Assembly: GCF_902459465.1 (NCBI RefSeq)
Contig: NC_047064.1
Location: 16,058,001 to 16,122,000, forward strand
Direction: 5' to 3'
DNA from: Asterias rubens
Lineage: Eukaryota
DNA length: 64,000 nt
In this document: piece after piece, positions 6,801 through 58,789 of the stretch
Layout: each line of letters begins with the position of its first letter
How positions within the stretch are numbered: the stretch's first letter is position 1
Made by a program: the position numbers and the translations under genes
Notes under the pieces: model-generated
The model's database searches: none
Told to the model about the DNA's origin: nothing
The model's input: only the letters and a program-made list of their open reading frames with translations

Positions 6801-7642
6801 ATTGACTAAAACAGAGAGGGATTTTCATTTGATTTATTTTAACGAAACAAAAAGCTAGGTTTTAAAAATATTGAAAACAAAACTTGGGGTTGATGTGCAA
6901 CACCGTAGATGAGGATCCTGGGTCAAAAAATTGACCCGGGTCCCGGTTTTCAGGGTCAGGTTGATCCGAAAACCGGTTAGAAATGGGATTCTTCGTCAGT
7001 TTGTTCTGATGGGTAATAAGTGTTAATATGGACACTGATGGTGGATTTGACACATAATTATTCTGGGTCACACTGACGCAGAAATGGATCAGGCCCCATG
7101 ACCCAGGCCGAGTCAAAATAGTTTGCGGGATTTCAATATTGCTCAACATGCCCCAAGTACTCACTCAACCATCCAGTGGACTCATCGGTCAGACATAAAT
7201 CCCGTGCAATGTCCGGCAGCAAATACCCGATGAACCCCAACTGAACACTGCCGTAGACCATCCCCCAGCCGCACACAATCAGCATCAGCCATTGCAACTT
7301 CCCGAATCCAACAAGCTCCAGCAGTCTCTCCATGGCCTCATCCAGTTCTTCAGCTCGCTCCTGCGACCCCGAAGGGTTCCTCTGCTCCATTGCCGTCTGG
7401 TAGGCAGAGGGACCAAGTTCATGGGTCGACTTGACTCGCTTTACGGAGTTTTGGTTTGGCTGAAGTTGTAACTCGATGTCCTCATCCGTGGCCCCGAAAC
7501 GAGAGGCTTGCATCCCCCGCCTATCTGCACCCCGCCTGCTCCGTCGTCCGCTCACGGAGTAAATCTCCACTTCATCCTGATCATCGTCTTCGTTCCTCCC
7601 GTCAAATCTGATCTCCTGATCATAATGGCGGCTAGACGCCAT
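864..7642 (-). CDS. Synaptic vesicle glycoprotein 2 (SV2/SVOP)-like MFS transporter, 5' part (continues beyond the left window edge)
   Basis: Exons 7642-7165, 6769-6586, 3633-3476, 3193-3069, 2099-2010, 1172-1077, 940-864, all GT-AG with matching phases (1,2,1,0,0,0,2). Translation has SV2-type segments: VGFGKLQWLMLIVCGW, IWGCAADLGSRRK, FAYLTEFVP, NWRIFCLV..PDSPYLLAE, and AFAFG (start of the GYYG helix). No further exon found at 1-863. Confidence 0.85.
1236..1965. mobile_element. TTAA MITE family A copy interrupted by a nested MITE
   Basis: Family A body resumes at 1941 (taccactagtgtccagtgcc) after the insertion. Confidence 0.75.
1588..1940. mobile_element. Palindromic MITE with CACTCTAAA termini and TA duplication
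   Basis: Inverted arms of about 100 bp (CACTCTAAAAACTAAAGAGTTGAATCCAACACTTGCATGAG.. / ..CTCATGCAAGTGTTGGATTCAACTCTTTGGTATTTAGAGTG). TA at 1586-1587 and 1941-1942. Confidence 0.85.
2404..2900. mobile_element. MITE with subterminal repeats
   Basis: Imperfect TIR GGTGTCGCATGCAAT / ATTGCATCTGACACC. Repeated TGCATATGCA and GTGTCCGCCCGGAC units in both orientations. Confidence 0.65.
3642..3680. repeat. (TAA)n(TAG)n microsatellite at an SV2-like acceptor
   Basis: Direct reading. Confidence 0.8.
4708..5095. mobile_element. TTAA MITE family A
   Basis: TTAA|AGGCAGTGGACACTATTGGTAATT ... AATTACCAATAGTGTCCACCGCCT|TTAA; full length. Confidence 0.9.
5356..5869. mobile_element. hAT-type MITE
   Basis: TIR CATAGAGCTATATA..TTGACTAGAGCGCTAAC with an exact 8-bp TSD AATGTGAC (5348-5355, 5870-5877). 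Confidence 0.85.
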
Positions 7643-9182: not shown

Positions 9183-10073
9183 GTTATCTCAGCCTTTCAA
9201 CAGATCAAAGGTTTAAACTCTCAATAAATAAAGCAGAACATAAACTCAATTGAAAGAGTTCAACGTCAAGCTAGATTTTGCACAGGAAACTACAAAAGGG
9301 ATACGGGAACTGTTACTAAACTTCTACCTAGTAGATGATTTGAGATGGGACACACTTAGGGGGTTGTTCTAAAACCCCCTCGACCCCCTCGACCATCGAC
9401 TTTTGTGCGATCTTTTTTTCTGTACACCGAAATTGCCACAGTTCACAACCTCAGCCAATCACGCACACAATTTTGTATGCTGACGTCGACTACCATGCCT
9501 CGCACATCACAACAACACAGCGTACGAGACAAGTAGTATGCACGAAGCAAACTTCGCGTGATTGGCTGCTGAGATCGGGCCTGTGGCAATTGTGATGTAC
9601 AGATAAAAAAACGCGGCATTTCCACGTGTATCTCTTGGCCGATCCAAGATTATTATCTCAACTGGAAACCTGCGTGTACTGCCCGAATACGATTACGGCA
9701 AACTCATTACCTGATGATCAGGTGGACCCATTTCCGGATGACTTCCGTCCTGTGTACTATTCCTTCATGGTACTACTAGTTACTCTAAGCGGAGCTCAAG
9801 GTTGTAGACCCGACTGACCAAATGGCCACACGGACGTGTTTGGGGTCCCCAATCGGTGTGCACTTGTCGTGTGGAAGCGGAGAGTAAATTCTCCCAATTA
9901 TGTGTGGCTGATGCAGATAAATATAACCGCAGTCTCAGACTTGAAGTCAAGCCTAGTCGTGGAAGGAAGTTGCGTCGCGGGACGCGGGTCACACACTGTG
10001 AATTCTAAATCGGGGACTTAATTCTTGCTCGGCCATAAAGGCGACATTTTATGAATTCGGAATTGATGTTGAT

Positions 10074-10263
10074 TGATTAGACCGATGTTTTAACAAGAGC
10101 CCTCTAACGTAGTTGGGATGGGTGTGTGGAGAACTTTGCACTGTTCTTGTTTCTGTTCTACTCGGTCCAGGACCAGGTCACAGTTGCACGGCTCCCCCTT
10201 GCCCCAATGCCCACCCCCCCCTCTCCCAACACACACACACTGCAGCTGTACAAAAACAAATTT
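10074..10263 (+). repeat. 190-bp direct repeat, copy 1
   Basis: Identical to 10978-11165 except for a 2-nt indel; flanked by AATTCGGAATTG at 10054-10065 and 10269-10280. Confidence 0.9.
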
Positions 10264-11767: not shown

Positions 11768-14700
11768 ATGGCAACAGAAGAGGGAGTAACTGTGGCGACT
11801 GATAAGGGAGTATCCGTAGCAACAAATGATGTTTTTAGAAACTGTTCCGATCTTCCGGATGAGATCATGCTGTATCACGTCTTGCCACTGATGTCCATAC
11901 GCGAAGTGAACACCTGCAAGCTCGTCTGCAAGAAGTGGCAGCATTACGTGACCTCTTACATCAAGAGGTTAAAGGTCATTGACCTGACGCAGTGGGACTG
12001 TATGGTAACTGAGGACCTACTTTTGGGGATAGTGAAATATGCAACGAATGTACGGGAACTGAGGTGAGATGTAAATGTGTGGAATAAAAATTGCAATTTA
12101 AAAAAAAAATTGAATTTTTTTCAACCAGTCAGATTCTCTGATTGATATAGTGAGTGCATTCCAGGTATGAGGAACAAACTTAACAATGCGTGACTTGATG
12201 CAGGCTTGAGAAGCTACACAGAGTTGGGTTTTATGAGCCAAGTAGTGTCGGACGCCGAGCGAAGGCTTGAGCGGCCACGCTGGTGGGGAGACGGGCAAAA
12301 GGATAAACAGCCAGGTGCTGTGTTGTCTCTTGAAAACAACAGGGCGACCGCTTGGCTATGTTACAGTCTGAACCAAATCTTATCATAGCTGTAGGGTGTC
12401 ATGGCTGAGCGGTTTAGAGCATCGAAATCAAGTTCTGGTGGTTAAGTCATCAGAGTGTGGGTTCGAATCCCGGTCTTGATACTTGTGTAGTAAGCAAGAT
12501 GCTTTACTATAATTGCTTCTCTCCACCAAGGGGTAGGGTTAGGTTTAGGGTTAAGGTACCTGCGAGGGTTGATATTGTGTATGAAAGAGCCACTATCGCC
12601 ATACGACGGTCAGGGCAGTATACTCCCCAGGGAGCTGAGGAAGATTTTAAAAGGAAGGTTTTAGGCACAATGACCAGCCGTCGATTTCACCAAACTTCCT
12701 AACTTCGGATTAATCATAGGAATAAGGACTGGTTCAGTTCCATATCAAAATACGTAGGACGCATTAAACCCATCCTAAGTTAGGACGGGTTACTCATCCA
12801 ACTCAAGTTAGGATCAATCCTAGCGTTTCGTGAAATCAGCTGCAGGGCACTTACATGGAAAGCGCATTGATATGGTTGATGTAAAATTAGTTATTATTAT
12901 TAAAACCAAATTTCCTCATAGCGTTTCCTGTACCAATCCTTTGCAGGTTAGACGTATGTTGGAGAGCTGTAACAGACACCAGCATCACCGCCGCTGCCGA
13001 AGTCTGTCACAATCTGAGGGTTTTTGCCGCGAGTAGATGTGGGAATCTGACAGACAATGCCATCGTTACTTTGGCTGAGATGTGTCCCCATCTAGAGGAG
13101 CTGGATCTCAGCAGCTGCTACGGGGTAAGGCTGAAAATTAGGCTGGATTTTTATTTGCGGCTACAGCTGTTGAGGATGTCTAATACTTCACTGTACGATG
13201 AGGCTGCCATCCATCCCTAGCCGTAGCCGCCAATATTACGAGTAGTATTGTGCACTAGCCTTAAGGTCTGGTGCTGTCAGAGTTCGAGTTCGGGAAGTGG
13301 ACGTATGGCACACAGTCGTTATTGAGCAAGACAAGATGAATAACATGTGGTCCCGTGTGTTGTGGAAGGAACATTCAAAAAAGCCTTTTTCAAACTGCTA
13401 CTTCAAAAAACCTTGATGAAAACTTTTTATCCAAATCCTGGCTAAACCATGGCCACAAGAGTCTGTGGTATCATCATGTGTAAATGTAGAGATGACTTAC
13501 AGACAATGGACACTGCTGGTAATTGTCAAAGAACAGTCTTCTCACTTGGTGTATCTCAAAATTTATGCATAAAATAAAAAACCTGTTAAAATTTGAGCTT
13601 GATTGGTCATCGGAGTTGAGAGCAAAAAACACCCTTGTCACACGAAGTTGTGTGCTTTCAGATGCTTGCCTTCGAGACCTCAAATTCTAAACTTGAGGTC
13701 TCGAAATCAAATTCGTAAAAAATCACCCATTTCTCGAAAACTGCGTCACTTCAGAGGGAGCTGTTTCTCGCAATGTTTTATACTATCAACTTCTCCCCAA
13801 TACTCGTAACCAAGTAAGGTTTTATGATAATAATACTTTTGAGTAATTACCAATAGTGTCCAGTGCCTTTAATCACGATATGCATAAACTGGTCTCTAAA
13901 AAGGGCCAAGATATAACTTACATCTCAGCAATTTATCTGTCCTTATCATACAAATCATTTAGATTAGCGATGAGGCTGTTTGTGGGTTAGCCGATAACGC
14001 CAAGAACTTGAAAGAGCTTCACATGAGCAGTGTCTACGGCGTGACAGACTACGGAGTCAGCCAGCTGGCCTTCAAGTGCTCGCTACTTCAGAATCTTGAT
14101 GTGAGCTACTGCAACGTTGTGAGTAACATCGGACTGCAGGCATTCCTGAACAAAGAGGGACCGCTGGCACTGACAGAGCTTCGGGTCAAGAACTGCCACA
14201 AGGTAGGAAAAATGTATACGAACGAAGAAAAATGTACACAGAAAGTGTATGGCGTCTTGTCTAACGGTGCAAAAAGGGCCAGGAAGCTATGTTCTTATAG
14301 TTCAACAGTTTTGTAGAAAAAGAAAGCGTGTGGCGGGTATGAACTCCGAGCGTAGGGTTTTTTCTGCTTGTGAAAATATTGATAGGTTGAGCAAGATTTG
14401 ATTAGTTTTGACCATTCGCCAGTGTGTGTTTGTAGGGCGTCATGGTCAAGTGGTTTTAAGAGGATCAAAATTCAAGTTCTGGTGGTCAAGTCATCAGAGT
14501 GTTGGTTCTGGTCCCAATCTTGACACTTGTGTCCTTGAGCAAGATACCTCTCCTTGCCCAGGGGTATATTTTAGTACCTGCTATGGTAGAGGTTGATAAC
14601 GGAACCCCTGGCAATAATTGCAGCCGATTATATACATTCAGAACTATGTCGAATGCTCCAGATTGAAAAGTAAAACCAATGATAAGCTACAAGTAAAAAA

Positions 14701-14944: not shown

Positions 14945-15798
14945 TCAAGCATCGAGAATCGGCCAACAGTCGTCCTTAGCCCTTTCTACTGTACAGAGCC
15001 AATTTTTATTATTGCTGTATATATTTTTTTATTATTTCAGAGATACCAACATACACGATTTGGGCGTAGCAAATACGATTTCGAGCCGTGACTACGACGC
15101 TACGATAATACTCAATAAAACACGCTAAACAAGCCGCCCAATATAATTTTATTAAATCTTACAATACATGCAAACAACGAATGAACTATTAAGTGGAAAT
15201 ACAAATTAAGAAAAATATCAAAACAATTGTAACAGAAAAGAAAAACACACTTTTTATTTTAGAACGCAGTGTTGAATAATAGCGGCGAATTCACTCGAAG
15301 AATGTACGTGTCTCGACGTAATGATTGTTGCGTGCCCTCCCCCGCTGGCTGGCCGGCTGAGTGTGCATTTTTTACGCTAGTGATTGCTGCAAGATCGTAC
15401 CCATTGATCTCTATTACACAATGGGGAATAGTGCACACGTGCGTGGGGAATGAGGTTGTGTGTGAACTAAACGTGTCACAGTAACCTCATTCCTCATGTA
15501 TCCACTATTATTGTGCCCACGCTGTCTGTACATGTACTTCATCGAAGATTGGCAAAAAAAGTACGAAATAATGGCGACAAAAAAAGGAGACCTTCTGAAC
15601 AAAAATACCTTCAACTGAGTGGCCTGCGAGGTCTAAGCTAGACAGTGTTTCATGTTTTCCTACCAGTAATTGTAGCGCCGATGTCCAGACAATGCCCAAA
15701 ATACGGACACGTATTTTTTGCCCAAAATCCGGACACTTTTTTTTTTTTTTTCTCCCTCCCAATAGCTTGTTGTTGCATTTCTGATCATTAAAACAAAA

Positions 15799-15867
15799 AC
15801 ATTTAAGTAAGGCCACCCTTTTTTATGTTACATTTAAGTAAGGCCACCCTTTTTTATGTTACATTTA
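15799..15867 (+). repeat. 31-bp tandem duplication
   Basis: ACATTTAAGTAAGGCCACCCTTTTTTATGTT twice plus a partial third unit. Confidence 0.85.
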
Positions 15868-16227
15868 TTTTTGAAACATAGTCAGAAGATGAGGGAAATC
15901 AGTTTTTTTTTTCAAGTTTCTTTTCACTGGCCATTATAAACATTTGTAGCTGTTCTGTTGATGCATACAGGTAATTGTTATTTCACAACAATGCCTGAAA
16001 ATGAGCTAATTAGCATTGTAGAGAGTAAAAGAAAGATCGGTATAGGTAGCCCAAGCTGCGCTCGCCCTTAACATTTGGGAGATGCTACTCTTTTTTAAAA
16101 TTCAATGTTGGCATCTCTGTTATTTGTGTATACATTTCTGGTACATATATAAGTAAACCAAGGATGCCTAATGTAAGTGAACCTATGTAATCACTCTAGC
16201 TTTTAAGCCTGAGGAAACATATTAACA

Positions 16228-16551
16228 TTAAAGCCAGTGGACCCTTTCGGTACAGACAAACAAATATAAGTTCACAGATTTACAAATAACTTACAGGGTT
16301 TACAGAAGGTACAATGTAGTGGTGAAAGACTTCTCTTGAAATATTATTCCATGAAATGCTTTACTTTTTGAGAAAACAGTAAAAAAATATCAATTCTCGA
16401 TAGCGAGAATTACGGATTTATTTTAAACACATGTCATGACACGGCGATTGAGCCTAAATTTTCACAGGTTTGTTATTTTATATAGACGTTGTGATACACG
16501 AAGTGTGGGCCTTGGACAATACTGTTTACCGAAAGGGTCCAATGGCTTTAA
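16228..16551. mobile_element. TTAA MITE family B
   Basis: TTAAAGCCAGTGGACCCTTTCGG ... CCGAAAGGGTCCAATGGCTTTAA. Confidence 0.85.
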
Positions 16552-17676
16552 CAAGGGTGCTTGCAATGTGATCAAGAAACACAAGGGTTAACCCCTCTTC
16601 CGTGTTGGTGTGTTCTTTTACATGCACTACTTAGTAAACATAATCTACGGATTAATGTCCCATCGGAAGGCCAAAACAGTTATGGTTAAGTATCACAATG
16701 AATTTTAAAGTCCATTAGCAATGCACAAACAATCTGTATGTCACATGTATTTTGTGCATTGCACATGTCAGATGTAAGAGTTTTTGTTTCAATTTGCAAT
16801 AATGCTGTGAAATACTGGTGTTCTTTTTAATGGGGATTATTTGACATTCTTAATTTTAAAATTGAATTATCTATTGAAGGCAATTTCCATGAATATCTAA
16901 ATAACTTGGTCAAGTTAGTTAAAGTGCATTTTATATTAACTGTATCAATGTGCTTTGCATTAGCTGCCTGCTGTCGATTTCTGGGAGTGACTAGTGTCAA
17001 GATGTGATAAATAAATAAAAACAATAAGACAAACTGTTCAGGTATTTATAAATGCCCTTTATTTATTTATTTGGTTTGTTTCAAACTAACTGAAGGTTTA
17101 ATCTATGGACAAGATATTTTATTCCCATTTCTTATTTTCATTTTCTCTAAAAACAACACCTTTGGTAGGCTAACACTTCTTTTGCACTATAACAAAAATC
17201 AAAAGGTTTAACATTGCTTATCATATTATTTCAATTCAATTTAATTTGGTTCAAAACCTCATTTATTTCACATAGACATCCTAAAAGGCTATGTTGTTTT
17301 GTTGTCCTGATATTGACGGCCATGTTCAATGGCCCTTAAAGGCCACCAAACATGTATGGAAAAAAAATGGGGGAAAAAATCTTAGAACACACGACTAAAG
17401 AAACAAAACTTTATGTAAAATGTTTTTGAACAGCTCTACAACATTATTATAACTACATTTCAATGAGTTAAACTCCAAATATAGAATCGGTAAGTTTACA
17501 AAAATACTATAAACAGAACCATTTGAAAGCTCAATGATTATGAACTTCAGGCCATTCACTAACTGCTTTATTTTGCTTGCATTCTACATTCCGGCACCCC
17601 TATTTCAGACAACCCTAATGTTCCGAGAAAAAAACCCACTGATGATTTAAACGGTAGTGTATTAGGGTTGGTTAAA

Positions 17677-17972
17677 CTAAGGGACACGCTGCCTTGGATC
17701 GGGCGAGATGGTTAATGAAAAGCATTTGAAACCATTAGTTATAAAATGCGTGTGATTAGATATTGCGCACTAACATGGTGGACCAACTTGTGGAGGCAGC
17801 AATTTTACTCCACAAATTAGCGAGCAGTGTTAGTTCATAACGTACATGTACACGGAAAACAAACAGGTGCATTTTTGAGGCATATTTGTGTGGATCATTA
17901 TTCTACTTTAAAAACATCTTTCTAATGAGGCATTTTATAGACCAAATCGCCCAATCCAAGGCAACATGTCCC
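17677..17972. mobile_element. TTAA MITE family C, degenerate
   Basis: GACACGCTGCCTTGGATCGG ... CCAAGGCAACATGTCC; homologous to 38888 and 52929. Confidence 0.65.
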
Positions 17973-18461
17973 GCTGTTTTCGTAAAGGTTAAGAAAATAC
18001 ACTAGGGGTGTAAAAACCCAGCAATCAAATCAGCAAGTATAGAACCCATCACAAACCCCCGACAATTAACGTTTGTTATTGATTTCAGTACAAAACAGGA
18101 TTTATTGGAAGCATGTTGATTAGACAGTACAAGTTGCAAATGAATTACTCTTCCAGAGTCAAATTAAATTGGGAGGGGGGGGGGGAGGGGGGAGGCTGTC
18201 GTCATGACACGGGCGGCCACTAGTATCAGGCCTAGAGTTTCATCTTTGAACATGCATGTCAAAAGGGCAAGGCCTTTTTCATTTTGAGAAAGGCACTTCC
18301 ATTTGAAAGTCTTTAAGTCGATGGGAAACTTTTCGACAAGATCAGGGGCAACAGAGGCCATGCCCTCCGTGCCCTCCGTGGCCTACAGGCATAGTATCAC
18401 AAAATAAACTTTGACAAGCCCCCCCAAAAATATATAATATTTAAGACAAAAAAAATCATAA

Positions 18462-21400
18462 TTATCTGTTGAGGTTTGCCCGTTGTATGTGCTCGTTAAC
18501 CGACGTCCGTAGCGTGTTAATGACCTGTCGTTGGTTGTCACTCTTCATAATAGCGCTGCCTGATACGATCATGTTTGCCCCCGCCTACAAGAAAACCAAA
18601 AGCAGTGTCAATCCTCTCAGGAGATGAACTCGCAATACAAAGTGGTTCCCACAGAGTGCACCAACGTTCCCTTTGATTTGTACTTGCAAAATGCGAGTAA
18701 CAACTTTTCTTCCACAAACACAAGTTTAAGTCTTCATATATCATGCGTGTTAAAGGGTCTTGGTACAAAACACAATGTCCACAGATTTACTTCAAGCTTA
18801 CACGGTTTGAAGATTTATGATGGTAGAGAGTTCCCTCAAAATATTACTTGCTGAGGTGCTTTAGTTTTTCAAAAATTAGTAAAACAAGTCACAAAAGTTT
18901 TTTAGCATGTAAAATGCATGTAAAAGTGATATTTTAAGAGACCTTCTACTAGCATTATCTGTGTAAGTTTAATGTAAATCTGTGGATATTGTGTTTTGTG
19001 TTACAAAAAGTACCAAAATCTTGTAAAAATAAAATAAAGTAATTAAAATACTGACCTTAGCCGCCATGTCGATAGTGGCAGGTCCCACGCCACCGTCCAC
19101 CTCGATGTCTAGAGACTGGTACATGCTGCGCAGCTTCTCAACCTAATCAGTGGAAACAAACAACAAATCCAATGTGAAAAGGAAAAGTGTAAAGGTTTCA
19201 AAGTTCTGAACTTTATAGTTGGAAACAGCGGATATGTAACCTGGCAAGTGATGGTAAGTGGACCAATGACAGTATGGGCTTCAATCATGAATATGTATGA
19301 GGTGCAGTTAATATTATAGTGTGCGTTCGTAAAGCTTCCCTGGGTCGACCCTGGTGTGTGGCGGTTTTCTTTTCCAGAACGAACATGGGTAATTATCTGC
19401 ACACGTTCATCCTGGAAAAAAAAAAACGCCACAAACCGGGGTCGACCTGGGGAAGCTAATCGAACACACCCATAAACAATCCAACAACAAGTTTATGCTA
19501 ACCATTCAATGGTGTTTCGGCAGGCCTGGGATTTCATCTTGGAGAGGGCAAGGCCATGATTTTACATTTTTTAAAAGGGCACTTTCATTAGAAAATCTTA
19601 AAGTTTTCATGATACTTTTTAAGGGGCACCAAGGTCAAGACTAGGGGCAACAAAAGGCTCGGACCTCCCTGGCCTTCCAGGTTCGATTTTGGGGGTAAGC
19701 TTTAGGGCTGCTCATAATCAATCAACCAGCCTGGCGGTTAAAGGCAGTGGACACTATTGGTAATTACTCAAAATAATTTTTAGCATTAAACCTTACTTGG
19801 TAACGAGTAATGGGGAGAGGTTGATAGTATAAAACATTGTGAGAAACGGCTCCCTGTGAAGTGATGTAGAAGTATTTTTCCACGAATTTGATATCGAGAC
19901 CTCAGATTAAGAATTTGACGTCTCGAAATCAAGCATCTGAAAGCACACAACTTCGCGTGGCAAGGGTGTTTTTTCTTTCATTATTACGTCGCAACTTCGA
20001 CGACCGATTGAGCCCAGATTTTCACAAGTTTGCTATTTTATGCATTATATGCTGAGATAGACTGGTCTTTGACAATAACCAAAGGTGTCCAGTGTCTTTA
20101 AGAGCACTGGACTCGAGAACCAATGTTTCTGATCAGCAGAGTGTGGGTTCGAGTCCCAGTTGTGAAAACTGTGTTCCTATTAAGAACGACACTTATTAAA
20201 CCACGATGTCCTTCAGACAGGGTGTAAAGCCGTTGGTCTTGTGTGTTTTGTAATGCAAGCAAAAAAAAACCTGCACATTATTGAAAATAGAAGGGGTTTG
20301 ACCCGGTGTTCCTGGTTTGATTGGCAGCATATTGCGCCACAGCACCTTGTAAACCATTACATGGTGCTATTTGAAAGAAGTAGGTCTCATACTTCAAGTG
20401 TAACCACACACCTTGCAGGAAAATATTGAATATACACGCTCCTTGAGCATCACTAAGCGCTATACAAGAAATCTATATTATTATTATTATTATACACATA
20501 TTGACTGGCAACGAGGTAACTAGTATATGTCTATTTCCACGAGGGACTTTGAGTGACCAGAAGAGCGACCCATTTCCCGAGGCCGAAAGCCGGACAAATA
20601 GGCCCCTCTTCTGGTCACTCACAGGCCCGAGGGGGAATCATCATGTCGAGCGCCATCTAGAAGCTCGAGCCTGCCCAGTGATTTTTCTCCAGATGTTCCG
20701 GTCCAGCATGCAGGAGCCAAGTTCCTCAGCGCTGGTCAAGCCGGTGTCTCGTTTTAGTGTGTCTACAAAGGAGAGACATCTTCTCCCACGCAAGGCCTTG
20801 CCTTGGGTGGGCTCCCAGAGGATGGTTGGGCAAGCGGCAAGCTCCGAGTGGCGGACACAGTGCCCAGCGAGCTTGAGTCGGCGTTCACGGATCTTCTCTG
20901 TGGCCTTTGGCCAGCCAGCATACAGGTTGGAGTTTCTCATGTGGTCCTGCCAGGGGATGTTACCGAATTATGCCAGTCAATATGTGTTGTATAACACAGC
21001 TCGGTCTTATATAGTCAAATAAGAACAGAAAAAGGAATTTTGTAGTTTGTTAAAGGTTCACGTCAAGAGAGGGCGCTGTTACCACGGGCACTATTTGCAC
21101 AGACTAGTGTCCGTTCTGGTACTATTACCGCAAAACACGCGCGCGCGATCACTAGCCTATAATAGTTCATCCCACATGACCGTGTTTCAGCCAACCAGAA
21201 CACAGAACGAGCAAGAGGTGTGTTAAAATATTATTATTATTATTATACAATACACTACCTTTGGCATCATGTCTTCCATGAACTTTTGTCCGCCGAATCC
21301 TGGTTCTACGGTCATGACTAGGATCATGTCTGCTTCTTCAACATACGGGAGGACTACATCGATAGGTGTCTTCGGCTTTACACCAATTCCTGCCTGGAAA

Positions 21401-47955: not shown

Positions 47956-48107
47956 NNNNNNNNNNNNNNNNNNNNNNNNNNNNNNNNNNNNNNNNNNNNN
48001 NNNNNNNNNNNNNNNNNNNNNNNNNNNNNNNNNNNNNNNNNNNNNNNNNNNNNNNNNNNNNNNNNNNNNNNNNNNNNNNNNNNNNNNNNNNNNNNNNNNN
48101 NNNNNNN
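47956..48107. other. Assembly gap (152 N)
   Basis: Run of N; begins where the SINE tail would be. Confidence 1.
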
Positions 48108-48572: not shown

Positions 48573-48937
48573 TTAAAGGCAGCGGACACTATTAGTAAAT
48601 ACTCAAAATAATTGTTAGCATAAAACCTGACAAAGAGTAATGGGGAGAGGTTGGTAATATAAAAATTGTGAGAAACAGCTCCCTCTGAAGTGACATAGTT
48701 TTCGAGAAAGAAGTAATTTTCCACGAATTTGATTTAGAATTTGAGGTCTCCAAATCAAGCATCTGAAAGCACACAACTTCCATGTGACAAGGGTGTTTTT
48801 TCTTTCATTATTATCTCGCAATTTTGACGACCAATTAAGCTCAAATGTTCACAGGTTTGCTATTTTATGCATACTGTGAGATACACTAAGTGAGAAGACT
48901 GGTCTTTGACAATTACCAATTGTGTCCAGTGTCTTGA
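48573..48937. mobile_element. TTAA MITE family A
   Basis: Both termini recognisable. Confidence 0.85.
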
Positions 48938-49888: not shown

Positions 49889-52800
49889 CTACTTTGCCGG
49901 CGGGATCAGAACTCCAGACACTTCATGAATGACGCCGTTCACGACTGTGGTATCCGTCTGGATCACTTGTTCGTTATCAACGAATACTCCTCCTGGACCG
50001 ATCAGAACCAAAATAGTCCCACCCGCCAGTGGTGCCAGCTTCTGGTTGTCGTACAGACCAGCGGCGTAGAGGGCAGCATTCACCACGTGGTACTCGAGAA
50101 CTTCTTGAAGGAAGGTCACATTGGCGAGCTTAGCCACCACGGCCTTGGGAAGCTTCTTGAAGGCGGCGTCGTTGGGAGCAAAGATCGTCAGTGGCTTGGA
50201 TGGGTCTGTTGCTAGTGCACCGGTTAGGTTTGCTTTCTGCAATGTTAAAAAAATAGTTTGCATCATGTTAGAGTCGAGAAAATAGAACTAGCTGTTGCAA
50301 GCAACGTTTTCTACACCTTTGCGTACTGGAGGGTAAATCAAAATACAGTTTTTGTTTTTATCTCCGATGCAAATAATTACACCTTATTAATAAATAATAC
50401 TGGTATAATAATTATTTGATTTGGCAAAGCATGGTGAGATGTTTCCGGTATTACCATGTGTGCATCTGCTTGCTCGGTATAGATGTTCTATAACAATATT
50501 GCCTTGCTTTATATTCTACTAACCGCGGATTGAGTAGATTTTCGGAATTCGCGAGAATTCACTCCGCTGAATAAGTGACCTCGACACTCAAGTGTAGTAG
50601 TCCCAGCTGATTTTCTACCTTCCGCCTACAGGTAGTTTAGTTCAAAAGCAGGAAAGTTCTTTTCACAACTGAAAAGTCTCAAAAATTCTGATAAATCTAC
50701 TACCGTACGCAGAAATAGAATACAAAGCAAGACAAATTTTCAAAAGAACATAGTCTACTCGGGTGTTTACCGCAAAAACAAACTTCCTCATCATGCAATG
50801 CCTCAAATCCCATAAACTGACGTTTCAAATTCCATACCGTTAGGAAACTGAAGAGAAGGCTGAATCTGGGATCCTTCTTCAGAAAGTCTGGCATGTTGAC
50901 ACCCATCGGGATGGGAAACATGACCTTATCGATGATGTGTACGATGCCGTTGCTGGCCTGGAGATCCGGGTGGATGATGGGAGCTCCGGTCGCCGTCACC
51001 GTCTGTGTTTACCGAATTAAAGACCATGGCAAAATTAAGTTAAAAGTACTGGACACTATTAATGGTAATTTTTCAAAAATAACCGTTAGTTTTATAGCAT
51101 AACAACTTACTTGGTAACGAGCAAGGGAGAGAGAGCTATTGGTAGTATACAACGTGAGAAATCAAACGTTTTTAGAAACAGCTCCCTCTGAAGTAACGTA
51201 GTTTTTGAGAAAGAAGTACATGTATATTTCTTACTCAAATATAACAAGACTTCAGGCCTGAAGCATTCCATCTGGCATTTCATCAGGCAAAAGTGTGCAA
51301 CAAGGGCTGCTTTCTTTCATTATTCTCTTGCAACTTCGACGACCGAAATGTAGTCAAAACTTTCCCAGATTTGTCATTTTATCATGCATTATGTTGGGAT
51401 ACACCAAGTGAGAATACTGGTCTTTGACAATACTAATGGTGTCCATTGCCTTTTTACGCGGGGTGAAAAATACAACACGAAAATGAGACGATGACCACGT
51501 GCGATTGTAGTCTTGGTGCAAGACGTTGTTGCTCATTAAAATACATCGGTGAAAGAATCGCAACGTGTGTAGTATCGAGTGTATGGCGGGCCTTATGGTT
51601 TTACTAACTCAACAATAACGTCTTGCACCAAGACTATAGAACAATCGTAGTACAGGACGTTTTGGGCGTAACAAAAAGGTTACTGTTAGCACCAACACCG
51701 CTCTTGTTACTAGTATACATGTACAAAGCTCTTGCATCAGGGAGATTTTTTACAACAATCACGAAGATATATGTCAAAGGATTTGGGTACCTTTTCAAAA
51801 TGTCCATAGATTTACATTAAACTTACAGGGTTTGAAGATAATGATAGTGGAAAGCTTCCCTTCAAATATCACTTACTAAGGTACTGTAGTTTTTGAGAAA
51901 TGAGTAAAACAATGTCATGAAAATACGTTTGTAAATGATAAAAGTAATGTTTGTCTCATGAGACGAACATTATTTTCATGACATTGTTTTACTCGTTTCC
52001 CAAAAACTACAGCACCTCAGCACGTAATATTTTCAGGGAAGCTTTCCACTATCATTATCTTCAAACTGTGTAAGTTTAGTGTAAATCTGTGGACATTGTG
52101 TTTTTTGGCCTACAAACGTTACATAGGTTGATTCTTTAAAAAACAAACTCCCGTGGCGACCGGAGGTCGAATTACAGGAAAAATTGTACAGAGATTAAAA
52201 ATTTGAAAAAAAATCACACTCTGTTATAAATTTAAGAAATAATTTACAATGTATAAAACAAATTGTTTTAAAAGTTGCGAAACAGTAGCCATGATTAAAA
52301 TGTTGCAGGCATAGTCAAAAAGCGCATAAAAAGCTGCATTCTATAGTATTGCAATTCAGTTGTTAAATAGGCGTGTGAGGTGAGGGAAATGGCTCTTTCT
52401 ATAGCGCTCTGTTACAAGCTCTGTGCTTGTGGATGTTTTTTTGTAGAGATAGCGAATACAACTTAGTCAACGTTTTATTGTAGGGCTTATGTTTGCTCGG
52501 TTGTAATCGCTGATAAAATAAAGTTGTAAAAGAATAAGCCGTTGCTAACAAACAAAGAGATCTGTAAATTATTGCGCTTCTCTTTCGACTAAACGCATAT
52601 CGTCGCCTGCGTCCGCCCGTCGCTGAAAAACATGAGAGGCAGATGGCGCAATCACCGAACGACGAGGAAACGAGAATAATTCAAGCCATACATTAAATTA
52701 TAATATGAATCTGTTTTGATTTTTGCGTTACCATTCAAAGTCTGATTCAGACTGTGTGGGAGCACAGAGAAGCTTTCTCTATGGTGGGAGGGTCGAAATA

Positions 52801-54855
52801 GAAAACAGAGACCTGGAGTTTGGCCGTCGGGCCTTACTTGCCCATAGCCTCAGTTGGTTGTAAACCTCACAGAAATTTTCCGTGGGTTCACCTTTCCATT
52901 GGTTCACTTTTAATCTAGAAGTCTCAAGTTAAAGGAACACGTTGCCCTGGATCGGTCGAGATGGTCTTTGAAAAGCGTTTGTAACCGTTTGGTACAAAAT
53001 GCATATTGGTAGAAAGATGTTGTAAAAGTAGAATACAATGATCCACACAAACATGCCTCTAAATTGCACTGGAAGTTTCCTTTTACCTCGTCGACTAATG
53101 GGAGTCAAATTGTTGACTCCCATGGCCGACCGTGTTAGTTCGCACAATAAAAGGATAAGTACGCAATTTCGAGGCAAATTTGTGTGGATCATTGTATTCT
53201 ACTTTTAAAACATCTTTCCAACCATATCCATTTTATAAAAAAACGGTTACAAACGCTTTTTATATACCAACTCGTCCGACTAATGTAGCTCAAATCTCTT
53301 GTGACACAACCATAAATGACACTCATGAATAGTGATAAACATATAACAATCACACAGTGAAATCATCTTTGTATACCCTACTCCACAGGAGTGCCCAAGA
53401 TGATGTGCGAATGTCACCGTGTTCAGAATCATATGAACGAACTTCCCGTGGCATTCAAATTGAAATGTGACAAAGCAATTATTGTGACTGCATGGCTCAT
53501 TTAAAATTCAATCTCTACAGAAATATTTCGATTGATTATTCACACAGATGCTCTAAAACCACAGCCAATTTCACCATGGTTTCTCCAAAATAACAAAGAA
53601 CGAAACTGTAAGCCGAGTGATGATCGGGCAAGAGACCTTCGATATACCGCCCATAAGTTCCATCTCAGCCCCCTTTGACAGTCGATGAGATCATCCGATC
53701 ATCCGAACAAAACAACTAGAAAAGGAGTCAGACCCTCAAAGAAGTAAATATAGAAGGACATTAATTTATCAGGACTATACCATACAAAAGTAATCCCTCC
53801 CGGTCCCGATGCCACCCTCGCTCGGCTTCCAGTGGAGAATGGATTAAAAAGGATTATCCGTAAACTGAAATTTTGACAAACAAATCAGTAACCTCCTCTT
53901 TGCGAGAGTACTTCTCTATAATACCCTCGATCTCCTTAATTCGTTCCGGCCTGAAGAATGGATCTACCATGGAGGAATCCTCCATGGATCTACCGAGGCT
54001 ACATATTTATTACAGTATTAAAGTATTACTTAGTGCTACCTACTGAGCCCAGTATTTAGAAGAAAAACTATTGTCGGTTTCTCTATGGTCTACCATTGTC
54101 ACTCCTCAAGCGAGGTGGTGTTAAGCCCACAATGCGAAAAAAGGGGACGGATTTCCTCTTTTGATTTCTAACAACTCATAAAGGTCCTTGGGCGAGATAA
54201 ACCTCGCCAGTTCGCGAATCACTCACTGTGTGGTCATTATTTATTCCCCAACAAAGATGTAAAACAGCTCTTTCTTTATAATGTTGAACTCCTTTTGATA
54301 CAAGCTTAATCCGGACAACAAGCAAGCTGACCCCACCCCCCCCCCCCCCTTTGCGCTGACGCGATGTGGCCTACATTTTCTCTACCTCCGTTCTCTTCTT
54401 ACCTGAACTGAATTAAGTTCCCCTTCCGAGTTGGGTAAAGTGTAAAAGTTGATCCGGATAAACTGAGGAGGGAGTGACGAACCGCCCATAGGACTCGGGA
54501 ACACGCTGGTAAGTAGCAAATTATTTCGTAGATCTTTACTGGTCGTCAGGCCGAGAGAAACATGGTACTCGATCCCAAATCGCAGCCCGTCTGTGCTGTT
54601 GATAAACTCTTTGAAAGCCGCCGGGCTTGAGGCGTATGCGCTGTCTGTGAACGCGAACACGGTGAGGCCATTGGATTGTGCACTGGACTCCAGAAGCTTT
54701 TTCAAATACGGACTCTTCCGGGCGAGGGCAGAAAACTCCTTTGCGCCGTTAGCCTCAGCGATGTCCAGGACATCATTCTTGCCAGAAGTCTTCACAGGGA
54801 AGACGACAGCCGCGATCACAAGGACCATGAGAATGGGTAGTGTTGATGAAGCCAT
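49889..54855 (-). CDS. Secreted two-domain fasciclin (FAS1; TGFBI/periostin-like) protein, isoform with first exon A
   Basis: Exons 54855-54403, 51002-50838, 50236-49889, all phase 0, 321 aa. Signal peptide MASSTLPILMVLVIAAVVFP. FAS1 motifs LTVFAFTDSAY / EYHV / ASNGIVHIIDKV and LTIFAPNDAAF / LEYHVV / VVNGVIHEVSGV. Confidence 0.9.
51040..51455. mobile_element. TTAA MITE family A, diverged
   Basis: Family A body and termini. Confidence 0.75.
51776..52130. mobile_element. TTAA MITE family D (internally palindromic)
   Basis: AAGATAATGATAGTGGAAAGCTTCCC / GGGAAGCTTTCCACTATCATTATCTT arms. Confidence 0.7.
52929..53280. mobile_element. TTAA MITE family C, right end truncated
   Basis: TTAAAGGAACACGTTGCCCTGGATCGG left end. 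Confidence 0.78.
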
Positions 54856-54893
54856 TTTGGACGAGTATGTAATGCCTAGTCGTATTTTCCGCC

Positions 54894-54900
54894 TTATATA
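54894..54900 (-). promoter_or_regulatory. TATA box of FAS1 exon A
   Basis: TATATAAGG on the minus strand about 40 nt upstream of the ATG at 54855. Confidence 0.55.
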
Positions 54901-55258
54901 GGGAGGTTTATGTAAACTGTACTATGTCGAGTACATGTACTTGAACATGAATGTATGAATTACATGTACAATGATATGGTACTCGCAACATGCAGTGGAA
55001 CCAGACCAGACTATATAATGCACAACCAAAAAGCTGCAATCGGAAGCACGTGCCTTTTATTATTGATAATGCCCCTATTGTAAATATTTTACGTAAGGAT
55101 ATCGGTTGCCCCGTGGTTGCCCTATGTCATAACCAATAATTTCTAAAGCTAACTGCAAACATGCTATTAAAGGCACTGGTCACTTTGGTAATTACTCAAT
55201 GTTGGTTGCAGGCCTGGTTGTTTGCTAGCCCACCTTGTTGGGCTGTTATGTCTCTCCT

Positions 55259-55680
55259 TTAAATGCAGTGTCGACACTATTGGTAATTTATACTAACAAA
55301 TAATTGTTAGCATAAAAACTTACTTGGGTAACGAGCAATTGAGAGTTGTTGATAGCATAACTCATTGGGAGAACGGCTCCCTCCGAAGTAACGTAATTTT
55401 TTAGAAATAGGTAATTTCTCACTCAAATAATAACAGATGGCCTACCTAAGCTGGAACCTTTTTTGTAATGCACCTGAAACTGAACGTACACAAAGTAATG
55501 CAACAAGGGTGTATTTTCTTTCATTAATCTCTTGCAAATTCGATGATCAATTAGCGAGTCAAAATGTTCACAGGTTTGTTGTTTTATGCATATAGGGCAA
55601 GTGTTGGGATACACCCAGTGGGAAAACTGGTCTTTGACAAATTGACAAAAACCAAAGGTCCCCAGTCCCAGTGCCTTTAA
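55259..55680. mobile_element. TTAA MITE family A, diverged
   Basis: Family A body; a short extra left end at about 55166-55200. Confidence 0.75.
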
Positions 55681-57599
55681 GTCGATGGTCAAAGGTCGTG
55701 TTGTGCTTGGGAGCCCAAAACATACTATACTAGTAGGACTACAGCTCACTATCGCACAGTGTGCGCGTGACTTAAGATTATCAAAAGTTACATTATTGCA
55801 TGGGATAATATGGATAATTTAATCTAGTGTGTACAAGTAAATTTACCTCTTCCATCCCAGGGTCTCGTGACAAAGTGCACGTGATGGGAAACTTTACGTT
55901 GTGCATCATAATTTTCAGGCACTGGTGAATCCGGCAGTTTTTTGGTTCAAATCCCGGTTAAAATCATGGTTAACAAAAAATAACAGCTGAATCAGTATTG
56001 GGATGTAGGCACTTTCTTTAGGCCTATTTTAAAAGTTTATATAAAAATCGGACAGTGCAATCTCCATGAAAAACAAGATTTAATGTTTCTCTTCAATTGA
56101 GCATTGTCCACTGAAATCGTCCCTGCATGGAAGTCGGTGTGATAATTTTTGTTTAGGCATAGAGCTCTATGGTTTATGTTACTTGAGATGATCCAACATT
56201 ACTTCATTATACACGTTCCGTCCCAGAATTGTATAGAACTGTCCCATCCCAACTGTAGAACTGTCCCAATAGTCGGGACCCAATCCCAACTTCAAACCCA
56301 ACAAAGTTGGGACGGCCCAAGTATATCTGGGATTAAGTGATAGTGTAATAATCACAGCAACAACCATGGCGGGCCTTTTCATTAATTTTTGATCTTTTCT
56401 AGTTTCGCTTGACACAGCCTTTTACCAAGGCTTTCGTGGTTTGGACAGGTTTGTGGAGCCGCGATCCCGAGCAACTGGAAGTAGACCAATTTATTGCAAA
56501 ATGCCCGCTTGATTTGTTTTTTTAGATTGGGGTTCGCACGTTCGAGAATTATCTTGAGAACAAAAAAATGTTACAAGAATCCACGTGTCCCTTTTCTATG
56601 ATTTAAATACCGTCCACGTTTCTGCAGCTACCATTGTGCTGTGACCCCACACACATGGACACTGGTCCGGCGGTCCGACCCTGTCTTAGTGCAATGTTCT
56701 TGTTAAAACCATAGCCATACGCAATGTGCACTCACTCCGTTCAACGCTACCTACCACACGTCGCGACTATTCCAAGGGAAAATGAGTACAAATTGCTATA
56801 AATAGACGATGTGACCTGTGACATCACATGACTTATTGTTTACAAAAGAGACACAGACCCTGGACTTCGCGCAGGCATGCTTTGTATACAGCTCAATGGA
56901 AGAAAACATAAAATCTTATATTTTATGGAGATTGCACTGTCTAATTCTTAACAACTTTTGATATGATGAAAAGGGGAACATCTCAAAACTTGACCAGCTT
57001 TTACTTCACAACTCTTGGTTTTATGTGGAAATTATGACACAAAATGTCAACTTTCCCATAGGACCAGTGTACGTAGTATCTTGACTGCCAGAATACTAAA
57101 AGAATGTACAGGGTCACACTTATTGTAAACAAAGTTCACATGGTCTATAGAAACTACCACATTGTATAATAGGCCAATAAGGAAACCATGTTTTCAACTT
57201 GGACGGGGGAAAAAATCACCAGGTTTCTTCACGTGTGGAATTCGTGTTTGTAATTGTTACGGTTTCTACCATTGGAACTGGTGTGTGTAGAATCCACGTT
57301 TGTAGTTCTTTCATAATTTTCAAGTTCTGTAACAATTGTTGATATATACCATGCTAAACATACTCATCAAAGCAAAATATCAATTTTATCGACATTTAAA
57401 TTTGACAATGAGATGTCTTTGTATGCCTGATTGAACCGTATAAAAAAAAATGTATTCCTCCATGATTTAATCAGATGAAGGGTGGGTTTATGGGGGGGGG
57501 GCTTTCCAGGGTCAAATGACAACGTTTCTGACGTACACCAGTCTCACATTCCCATGAAGCTCAACTAAAAATTTAAGCTGTATTTGAAAACTGTCTTTT

Positions 57600-57778
57600 T
57601 TCAAAGGCACTGGGCACTTTTGGAAATTAAAGCACATAAAAACAACTTGGTGTTTTTCTTTCATTATGCTCTCCTTGCAACTTCGATGATCAATTGAGTT
57701 CAAATTTTCACAGGTTCATAGTATGCATAATTTGTTGGGATACATACTGGTCTTACCAAAGGTATACAGTGCCTTTAA
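57600..57778. mobile_element. TTAA MITE family A, short derivative
   Basis: AAAGGCACTGGGCAC ... CAGTGCCTTTAA. Confidence 0.65.
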
Positions 57779-57832
57779 GCTGTGATTTAAGTAATTTAAA
57801 CACTATATATTTTTTTTTATGAATCTAATCAC

Positions 57833-58309
57833 CTTTCCAAAACGGTTAGTCAAGTTTGCCTTTTCATCATATTCAACATCGTAGACATTGAACCTGATGG
57901 TCAGGACAGGTTCCGGTAAGTCCTCCATCTTCCCAGGTGGGCGGAATGCACTTGGGATCCTCAAATTGTTGTTAATCTCCTTCGTATAAACCTCAGAGAG
58001 ACCAATGTGGTACCGTAAATACCACTCCAAGACCTGTGGGTCCCGCAGGGCGATCTTGACGGCTTTGGGTAGCCTGTCGAACGCACGGTCGGTCGGGGCT
58101 AGGGCCATGTACCCCGTTGACGACAGGTTCCCAAGGGTCTGGTTCACCCATGGTATGGATCGAGCGTACTTGGCGAATGTCAAAGCTCCTGCGTTCTGGC
58201 ACACCTGAAGGATGTCATCGTTATGCACAGCGATGTTGACATCGTTACTCAGCCGTGAACTACAGCCGAAGGCAGAGAGGAACCAAACCAGTAATTTCGA
58301 GAAAAACAT
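57833..58309 (-). CDS. Second FAS1 first exon (exon B: signal peptide plus most of FAS1 domain 1); probably splices to 51002-50838 and 50236-49889 (329 aa)
   Basis: Open 159-codon exon MFFSKLLVWFLSAFGCSS..YMALAPTDRAF..LRYHIG..IRFNVY..RFGK, ending at a phase-0 GT donor (AAG|GTGATT). No downstream exon of its own was seen in 54856-57832. Confidence 0.8.
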
Positions 58310-58789
58310 TTTGCACAAAAGTTGATTTTTGTGTACTGTTTACGGTGTATGTAGCACACAAAATGACTCGAGGTCTATGATTCTGACCTTAAATTTTCAC
58401 ATTGAAACATAAACTATTCGTTTCCTGTACGTGTGATATCTGATAGTTCCTGTTCCAACACTGGTTTCATTGTCTATCTTAACCTTTGGTAGACTCCAAA
58501 GTCGGCTTTCAGTTTCCCTCATTCTCGAAGCAAAACACTTTATTTTGCAATAGCGCCCTCTCTTCAATAATTCAGGTTGCATACGAGGAGTGAAGGCCTA
58601 CATGCTGATGTAATTTTTAAAATAATATTAAGAGACCATCCCTTATCGTACTACCTAGATTAGAAGAAAAGAAAATACATTTTGGAGATTTAATTTTATG
58701 ATCATTATTAATTTTATGAAATTTAATGATCATACTGACCTTATGATATTGAAGGACAACGCTGATGCGATGGGACATCCATTCTCAAA

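What the first reader, a model, noticed from the sequence alone, without database searches (positions are those of the whole stretch)
49889..58309. Fasciclin locus with two variable first exons sharing constant 3' exons (protocadherin/UGT1A-like architecture)
Seen: two open exons, A (54855-54403, 151 codons) and B (58309-57833, 159 codons). Each encodes a signal-like N-terminus, the FAS1 H1 motif (LTVFAFTDSAY vs YMALAPTDRAF), the YH motif and IRINFY/IRFNVY, then a different loop. Both end in phase 0 at the same structural point, just before the last strands of FAS1 domain 1. Those strands (TVTATGAP..ASNGIVHIIDKV) occur only once, in the phase-0 exon 51002-50838, and I found no copy between A and B. 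A has its own TATA box. A and B are very divergent yet both free of stops. Known: clustered protocadherins and UGT1A use promoter choice among variable first exons; I know of no such description for FAS1 adhesion or matrix proteins. Inference: promoter choice builds two chimeric FAS1 domains (321 and 329 aa proteins) with different binding surfaces on a constant scaffold.
Basis: partly seen in the sequence, partly recalled or inferred. Interest (0 to 1): 0.82.

Follow-up and report, generated by a model that had tools for sequence, protein, structure and literature searches.

The report
Sea-star fasciclin gene, two first exons
A sea-star gene for a small secreted adhesion-type protein has two interchangeable first exons that share the same last two exons; the arrangement is real and very old, but it is already in the public annotation and is a familiar gene design.

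Summary
The window is Asterias rubens. On the minus strand lie exon B (58309-57833), exon A (54855-54403), E2 (51002-50838) and E3 (50236-49889). A and B each encode a signal peptide plus the first two-thirds of FAS1 domain 1. E2 alone supplies its last strands, and no second copy exists in the window. RefSeq already lists both products exactly: XP_033625042.1 (329 aa, B+E2+E3) and XP_033625043.1 (321 aa, A+E2+E3). The same isoform pair is annotated in A. amurensis and Patiria miniata.

RNA contigs cover both exons and not the unique intron sequence. They leave the genome exactly at both donors. Each B- and A-exon contig that crosses its donor in a run with both exons fully covered carries 28 extra letters, which is what k=31 assembly gives if both paths merge on one shared exon.

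The order B-A-E2-E3 also holds in a brittle star (B unannotated) and a sea urchin. A and B form separate clades, so the duplication predates the split of these classes. B is under purifying selection (dN/dS 0.26).

This is a two-member, alternative-promoter, tandem-exon-duplication locus: a known kind, far smaller than protocadherin or UGT1A arrays. Different binding by the two isoforms is untested.

The parts
57833..58309 (-). Variable first exon B, coding part: signal peptide plus the N-terminal two-thirds of FAS1 domain 1 (159 codons, phase-0 GT donor at 57832). The 5' UTR runs upstream to at least about 58416-58429.
   Evidence: It equals residues 1-159 of RefSeq XP_033625042.1. RNA contigs X1 record 8 and X3 record 32 match 57833-58399 and leave the genome exactly at 57833.
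54403..54855 (-). Variable first exon A, coding part: signal peptide plus the N-terminal two-thirds of FAS1 domain 1 (151 codons, phase-0 GT donor at 54402). The 5' UTR reaches about 54885-54889.
   Evidence: It equals residues 1-151 of XP_033625043.1. Contigs X2 record 19 and X3 record 28 stop matching exactly at 54403. X1 record 3 and X2 record 19 begin at 54889 and 54885.
54894..54900 (-). TATATAA motif upstream of exon A. Its role as a TATA box is doubtful because RNA contigs reach within 5-9 nt of it.
   Evidence: Sequence; contig ends.
50838..51002 (-). Constant exon E2: the last beta-strands of FAS1 domain 1 plus the linker and start of domain 2 (55 codons, phase 0 at both ends). It is the only copy in the window.
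   Evidence: It is shared by both RefSeq isoforms.
49889..50236 (-). Constant exon E3, coding part: FAS1 domain 2 (115 codons plus stop). The 3' UTR probably runs about 980 nt further, to about 48906.
   Evidence: The 3' UTR length is inferred: X2 record 19 is 1979 nt, of which 483 lie in exon A, and a SINE-like repeat starts near 48920.
54856..57832 (-). Spacer between B and A. It is intron for B-promoter transcripts and holds A's promoter. No FAS1-like coding sequence is present. Non-repeat parts have near-zero RNA depth. It contains SINE-like repeats.
51003..54402 (-). Intron common to both transcripts, holding MITE-like inverted repeats and SINE-like repeats.

Best explanation
This is one Asterias rubens gene for a small secreted protein with two FAS1 (fasciclin) domains. 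It has two tandemly duplicated alternative first exons, B (upstream) and A, each with its own transcription start. Each first exon ends in a phase-0 donor and has no acceptor. A transcript started at B therefore splices over A to the first available acceptor, E2, and a transcript started at A splices to the same E2. The products are a 329-aa and a 321-aa protein. They differ in the signal peptide and the helical N-terminal two-thirds of FAS1 domain 1, which carries the H1 and YH motifs. They share the last strands of domain 1, the linker and all of domain 2. Shown here: the exon anatomy, the single copy of E2/E3, expression of both first exons, use of both donors, conservation and constraint of both exons, and foldability of both chimeras. 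Inferred: that the B donor joins E2 itself (from the 28-letter overhang and RefSeq models), that promoter choice is regulated by tissue or stage, and that the isoforms bind different partners. The exon-1 duplication arose before asteroids, ophiuroids and echinoids diverged. By general knowledge of echinoderm divergence times, not tested here, that is roughly 480-500 million years ago.
For: RefSeq proteins XP_033625042.1 (isoform X1) and XP_033625043.1 (isoform X2) equal B+E2+E3 and A+E2+E3 residue for residue. The same X1/X2 pairs with identical C-termini exist in A. amurensis and Patiria miniata.

RNA contigs: unique intron bins have 0 depth in X1 and X2. Exon A depth is 467-945, 22.6 and 49.8 in X1, X2 and X3. 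Exon B depth is 98.6, 7, 72.9 and 7.1 in X1, X2, X3 and X14. The B contigs X1 record 8 and X3 record 32 end their match exactly at 57833 with 28 unplaced letters. The A contig X3 record 28 ends at 54403, also with 28 unplaced letters. A ends ..CAG and B ends ..AAG. The shared AG plus 28 nt of E2 makes 30 = k-1, so the paths merge on one exon. X2 record 19 runs from exon A for 1496 nt more, which fits E2+E3+3'UTR.

There is no hidden E2 copy. The order B-A-E2-E3 holds in A. amurensis, Patiria, Amphiura and Diadema. In the tree, the A clade has support 95/90 and the B clade 82/85, each with three classes. B has dN/dS 0.26 between the Asterias species; B is 61% identical between Asterias and Patiria, against 59% for the constant part. 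AlphaFold gives pLDDT 85.2 and 86.7, with the exon junction inside a confident strand. The fold matches TGFBIp 5NV6 at TMq 0.76.
Against: I did not read the letters across the B-E2 junction. The stretch allowed for read laying could not hold both sides, and the loose-end table was cut off. Contigs are assemblies, and the runs are only guessed to be RNA, although silent introns support that. In two sea urchins RefSeq models the B-type exon as a separate short protein (169 and 178 aa) that is not joined to the constant exons, so sharing of E2 is not shown for all echinoderms. Exon A shows dN/dS of about 0.93 between the two Asterias species, though from only about 14 substitutions. No tissue or stage data were available, and contig depths are poor measures of expression.
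Confidence: 0.88

Rival explanations
1. Exon B is the orphaned first exon of a lost tandem gene copy. Its transcripts borrow E2/E3 of the downstream gene only as low-level read-through chimeras with no function of their own.
For: B has no private downstream exons. The present layout could have arisen by whole-gene duplication followed by loss of the upstream copy's 3' exons.
Against: B has stayed intact, with signal peptide and phase-0 donor, in asteroids, an ophiuroid and echinoids. Its dN/dS is 0.26. It is as conserved between Asterias and Patiria as the constant exons. Its contig depth is comparable to A's and exceeds it in X3.
Confidence: 0.05
2. B belongs to a separate gene that makes a short secreted protein with a truncated FAS1 domain, ending in the intron or in a private small exon, as RefSeq models it in sea urchins.
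For: Diadema setosum XP_072174327.1 (169 aa) and Lytechinus pictus XP_054750091.1 (178 aa) are B-type exons with unrelated short tails. ORF calls that read through the donor exist in public contigs (P0173, P0176).
Against: In Asterias the RNA contigs leave the genome exactly at the GT donor, so they are not read-through, and the overhang is the 28 letters expected for convergence on E2. Unique sequence between B and A is silent. A FAS1 domain without its last strands is unlikely to fold. The urchin B exon also ends in a phase-0 donor compatible with its E2. P0173 and P0176 look like ORF calls on genomic or unspliced contigs.
Confidence: 0.05
3. This is an assembly artefact: B's own E2/E3 were collapsed or lost in this assembly.
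For: None specific. An N run lies at 47956-48107, outside the locus.
Against: Independent assemblies of A. amurensis, Patiria, Amphiura and Diadema show the same order, with one E2 and one E3.
Confidence: 0.01

Closest known systems
Tandem exon duplication-derived N-terminal substitutions made by alternative promoters (class described for human genes in Martinez-Gomez et al. 2021, PMC8373072)
   Same: A tandemly duplicated 5' coding exon, each copy used from its own promoter, gives homologous but diverged N-termini on a constant body. Conservation is deep and both copies are under purifying selection. The paper states that duplicated 5' CDS plus alternative promoter use gives homologous N-termini, and that 91% of such human events predate the fish-mammal split.
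   Different: This is a different protein family and phylum. Here the swapped piece is two-thirds of a single FAS1 domain plus the signal peptide.
Clustered protocadherins and UGT1A (variable first exons, constant 3' exons)
   Same: Each variable first exon has its own promoter and a donor but no acceptor, and splices to the first constant exon. Mutual exclusion follows from promoter choice.
   Different: There are two variable exons, not about 9 to 50 or more. There is no evidence for stochastic or combinatorial choice. In those loci the variable exon encodes whole domains (the entire ectodomain plus TM, or the entire substrate-binding domain); here it ends inside a domain. This comparison rests on my general knowledge.
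Chelicerate sDscam 5' cassettes (PMC4835542) and Drosophila Gr39a (PMC2204066)
   Same: These are invertebrate loci where tandem 5' cassettes or first exons are combined with constant 3' exons through alternative promoters (abstracts seen).
   Different: They have larger arrays and encode membrane receptors. I did not read these papers beyond the abstracts.
TGFBIp (BIGH3) and periostin, human FAS1 matrix proteins
   Same: The FAS1 fold matches: Foldseek to 5NV6 and 5YJG gives E about 1e-23, TMq 0.75-0.76 and rmsd 2.4-2.7 over 301 columns. Both are secreted, and RefSeq names the sea-star proteins after them.
   Different: The sea-star protein has two FAS1 domains and no EMI domain, against four FAS1 plus EMI. 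Sequence identity is 21-26%. It is not an ortholog. The human genes are not known to me to swap part of a FAS1 domain through alternative first exons.

Membership tests
FAS1 / fasciclin domain proteins (Pfam PF02469) | Sequence match to the Fasciclin profile above the curated cut-off | tested here: met
   All four exons score above the 22-bit cut-off: B 29.4, A 26.5, E2 27.9, E3 87.2. A or B (ending at profile positions 85 and 80) followed by E2 (94-123) covers most of one domain, with a short unmatched stretch in between.
FAS1 / fasciclin domain proteins (Pfam PF02469) | FAS1 fold | tested here: met
   AlphaFold models have pLDDT 85-87. Foldseek top hits are TGFBIp and periostin, then fasciclin I 1O70.
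TGFBI / periostin orthologs | N-terminal EMI (CROPT) domain followed by four FAS1 domains | tested here: not met
   Only two FAS1 domains in 321 or 329 aa and no other Pfam hit. The RefSeq names 'periostin-like' and 'TGFBI-like' reflect domain similarity only.
Variable-first-exon / constant-exon loci (Pcdh, UGT1A type) | Two or more homologous first exons in tandem, each with start codon and donor, upstream of shared exons | tested here: met
   the same order in four other echinoderm genomes.
Variable-first-exon / constant-exon loci (Pcdh, UGT1A type) | Each variable exon has its own transcription start | tested here: met
   A contigs begin at 54885-54889 with nothing upstream attached. B contigs run to about 58416-58429. 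Unique sequence between them is silent. Exact start sites (CAGE) were not available.
Variable-first-exon / constant-exon loci (Pcdh, UGT1A type) | Every variable exon is spliced to the same first constant exon | tested here: inconclusive
   For A: the contig continues 1496 nt past the donor, and full-length homologs exist. For B: there is an exact donor break, a 28-letter overhang matching convergence on E2, and RefSeq models in three species. The junction letters themselves were not seen.
Variable-first-exon / constant-exon loci (Pcdh, UGT1A type) | Large array with stochastic or combinatorial choice giving cell-to-cell diversity | tested here: not met
   There are exactly two variable exons in the window and in relatives. 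The choice mechanism is not testable here.
Tandem exon duplication-derived substitution (PMC8373072) | Homologous adjacent exons used alternatively, both conserved in distant species | tested here: met
   A and B are 29-32% identical within each species and 40-61% identical between orthologs. They form separate A and B clades across three classes. No contig joins B to A (within what was listed).

The most novel reading that the evidence does not exclude
An exon-1 swap roughly half a billion years old, kept in at least three echinoderm classes, lets one gene make two secreted FAS1 proteins. Their first domains have different ligand-facing helical halves on one shared beta-core and second domain, and they are deployed from separate promoters in different tissues or life stages. 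Only B was seen in a marine metatranscriptome, and the A:B contig depth ratio ranged from about 0.7 to about 9 between runs. This would be a rare documented case of specificity switching by exchanging part of a single adhesion domain.
Probability: 0.45. Interest if true: 0.45.

Novelty: new member of a known kind. Interest (0 to 1): 0.35.

Why it matters
This is a clean, deeply conserved example of alternative promoters exchanging most of one protein domain while keeping its last strands, in a family (FAS1) for which I found no such description. It gives echinoderm developmental biologists two isoform-specific targets. It also flags annotation gaps: an unannotated B exon in Amphiura, and B modelled as a separate short gene in sea urchins. 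It does not open a new mechanism. The design is well known, and the isoforms are already in RefSeq.

Tried and rejected
1. The phmmer search of exon B against 50%-identity cluster representatives gave no self-hit, because the cluster representative differs. It was still useful for finding B-type exons in urchins, TARA contigs and Ptychodera.

2. Read laying could not span both the B donor and the E2 acceptor. I chose 52400-58399. The loose-end table was truncated and did not list the letters at 57833.

3. An exact search for the 26-nt B|E2 junction in JGI metagenome contigs found 0 hits.

4. No Logan or ENA contig in the protein collection carries a full spliced isoform. The cluster members are read-through ORFs from genomic or unspliced contigs.

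5. Literature searches for 'Asterias rubens' + 'periostin-like' and for 'fasciclin' + 'alternative first exon' found nothing relevant.

6. A search with the B part of the full isoform found full-length B-type proteins only in A. amurensis and Patiria.

7. A hidden or diverged private exon 2 for B is rejected.

8. The TATATAA motif as A's TATA box is doubtful, because contigs reach within 5-9 nt of it.

9. The earlier-findings look-up by place was empty.
Full report
**What is there.**
- Exon B is 58309-57833: 159 codons, ending AAG|GTGATT.
- Exon A is 54855-54403: 151 codons, ending CAG|GTAAGA.
- E2 is 51002-50838: 55 codons.
- E3 is 50236-49889: 115 codons plus stop.
- All junctions are in phase 0.

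Pfam's Fasciclin profile (123 positions) is matched at 3-85 by A, 16-80 by B, 94-123 by E2 and 13-123 by E3. A and B are therefore alternative N-terminal two-thirds of one FAS1 domain, and E2 holds its only C-terminal strands. A and B are about 30% identical.

Neither tblastn nor a profile HMM of the E2 segment run on every six-frame ORF finds another E2- or E3-like piece in the 64 kb. The HMM hit E2 at 1e-31 and the end of E3 at 3e-6; the next hit was E=0.66.

**It is already annotated.** A search with the A-type protein returned two NCBI models per species:
- Asterias rubens XP_033625042.1, 'periostin-like isoform X1', 329 aa.
- Asterias rubens XP_033625043.1, 'TGFBI ig-h3-like isoform X2', 321 aa.

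These are identical, residue for residue, to B+E2+E3 and A+E2+E3 of the window. A. amurensis and Patiria miniata carry the same X1/X2 pairs with identical C-terminal halves.

**RNA evidence.** Two runs of organism A (X1, X2), one of a close relative (X3) and one marine metatranscriptome (X14) were laid on 52400-58399.
- Unique intron and spacer bins have zero or near-zero depth, while both first exons are covered, so the runs behave as RNA.
- Contig depth for A versus B was 467-945 versus 98.6 (X1), 22.6 versus 7 (X2), 49.8 versus 72.9 (X3) and 0 versus 7.1 (X14).
- Contigs X1 record 8 and X3 record 32 match 57833-58399 and then carry 28 letters that do not continue into the intron. X3 record 28 does the same at A's donor, 54403, again with 28 letters.
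- A ends ..CAG and B ends ..AAG, in both Asterias species, and E2's first 30 nt are identical in both.
- In a k=31 de Bruijn assembly, two paths that merge on one sequence are cut after k-1 = 30 shared letters. Here that means AG plus 28 letters of E2. Logan's word size is my general knowledge, consistent with the tool's 31-letter index.
- The exact 28 in all three contigs is what convergence of A and B on one shared exon predicts. A private exon for B would not produce it.
- X2 record 19 (1979 nt) runs from 54885 through A's donor for 1496 further letters. That fits E2 (165) + E3 (348) + about 983 nt of 3' UTR, and would end where a SINE-like repeat begins.
- A's contigs start at 54885-54889 with nothing attached upstream, so A has its own start. 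B's contigs reach about 58416-58429.

I did not see the junction letters themselves, because the loose-end table was truncated. The B-to-E2 join is therefore strongly inferred, not read.

**Evolution.** Fetching the orthologous loci shows the same order, B-A-E2-E3, in four other genomes.
- A. amurensis (L001) and Patiria miniata (L002) both have it.
- The brittle star Amphiura filiformis (L006) has an intact but unannotated B-type exon at 7036-7521, with signal peptide and a phase-0 CAG|GTATGG donor, 2.5 kb upstream of the annotated A-type first exon.
- The sea urchin Diadema setosum (L003) also has the order. B there is split by an extra intron and modelled as a separate 169-aa protein.
- The hemichordate Ptychodera flava has the same three-exon gene but only one first exon.

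The flanking alpha-2-macroglobulin-like gene is shared by Asterias, Patiria and Diadema, and the DEAH-helicase gene by the two sea stars.

In a maximum-likelihood tree of first exons, the A-types form one clade (95/90) and the B-types another (82/85). Each clade contains asteroids, ophiuroids and echinoids, and Ptychodera sits next to B (85/79). The duplication therefore predates the split of these classes.

Between A. rubens and A. amurensis:

| Region | dN/dS | Note |
|---|---|---|
| Exon B | 0.26 | dS 0.15 |
| E2+E3 | 0.20 | |
| Exon A | 0.93 | about 14 substitutions in all |
| Introns | n/a | about 94% identical |

Between Asterias and Patiria, B is 61% identical, A is 49% and the constant part is 59%. 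B is not a decaying relic. If anything it is the more conserved of the two.

**Structure.** AlphaFold2 with a 15-sequence alignment gives pLDDT 85.2 and pTM 0.80 for the B isoform, and 86.7 and 0.82 for the A isoform. In both models the exon junction falls inside a confident beta-strand (157-163 in B, 149-155 in A), followed by the two final strands from E2. The low-confidence parts are the signal peptides and the loops just before the junction. The B model superposes on two consecutive FAS1 domains of human TGFBIp (5NV6; TMq 0.76, rmsd 2.4 over 301 columns) and of periostin. With two FAS1 domains and no EMI domain, the protein is a FAS1 family member but not a TGFBI or periostin ortholog.

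**Mechanism.** Each first exon has a donor and no acceptor. Transcripts from the B promoter therefore remove everything up to E2, exon A included, and transcripts from the A promoter join the same E2. Mutual exclusion follows from promoter choice alone, as in clustered protocadherins and UGT1A. This is the class that Martinez-Gomez et al. describe as tandem exon duplication-derived N-terminal substitutions made by alternative promoters, which are typically ancient (PMC8373072). Whether the isoforms differ in expression pattern or binding is not shown. The varying A:B depths, and B alone in a plankton metatranscriptome, are only hints.

**Verdict.** It is a real, conserved, two-promoter, shared-exon FAS1 gene. 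It is a new member of a known kind and is already present as automated gene models, so interest is modest. The scan's own notes list other alternative-first-exon loci in this genome, for example a Rab8 locus (s1-150079; not checked by me). That suggests the design recurs here.

Noticed in passing
L006:7036-7521 (Amphiura filiformis, CM076874.1): There is an intact B-type first exon: 162 codons, signal peptide, phase-0 donor CAG|GTATGG. It lies 2.5 kb upstream of the annotated A-type first exon of XP_072020726.1 and is not part of any listed gene model. It is probably a missed isoform.
   Followed up: partly
L003:10001-15076 and 15286-18462 (Diadema setosum, OZ188199.1): The B-type exon is split by an extra intron (10001-10222 and 12163-12363). 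It is modelled as a separate 169-aa protein whose last exon (about 14983-15076) sits about 200 nt upstream of the A-type ATG. Its phase-0 donor at 12363 would also fit E2 at 17061. Either urchins uncoupled B from the constant exons, or the model is incomplete. Lytechinus pictus XP_054750091.1 is similar.
   Followed up: partly
window 58375-58410 (-): A short upstream ORF (ATG plus 10 codons, then stop) lies inside the 5' UTR of the B transcript, as delimited by RNA contigs.
   Followed up: no
window 52800-53400, 55200-55800, 56800-57200, 57600-57800: Intronic repeats (MITE-like inverted repeats at 51796-52100 and 52988-53242; SINE-like elements sharing a 42-nt core) draw RNA contig depths of 10^4 to 10^5 from copies elsewhere. 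These repeat families are therefore heavily represented in sea-star transcriptomes.
   Followed up: no
window 54403-54855 vs L001:13013-13462: Exon A has dN about equal to dS (0.031 vs 0.034), plus a one-codon indel, between A. rubens and A. amurensis, while B and the constant exons are constrained. A-type branches are also longer in the tree. Selection on the A isoform may be relaxed or diversifying, but the counts are small.
   Followed up: partly
L007:2919-3530 and L008:646-1239 (TARA metagenome scaffolds): Ocean metagenome contigs carry B-type first exons that group with Amphiura's in the tree (45-46% identical to the Asterias B exon), read through into the intron by the ORF caller. This is echinoderm, probably ophiuroid, DNA in plankton samples.
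   Followed up: partly
L001, L002, L003 flanks: Synteny is conserved. An alpha-2-macroglobulin-like gene lies upstream, divergently oriented, in Asterias, Patiria and Diadema. A DEAH-box helicase gene lies downstream in the two sea stars.
   Followed up: no
window 47956-48107: This is a run of 152 N, downstream of the gene's 3' end.
   Followed up: no
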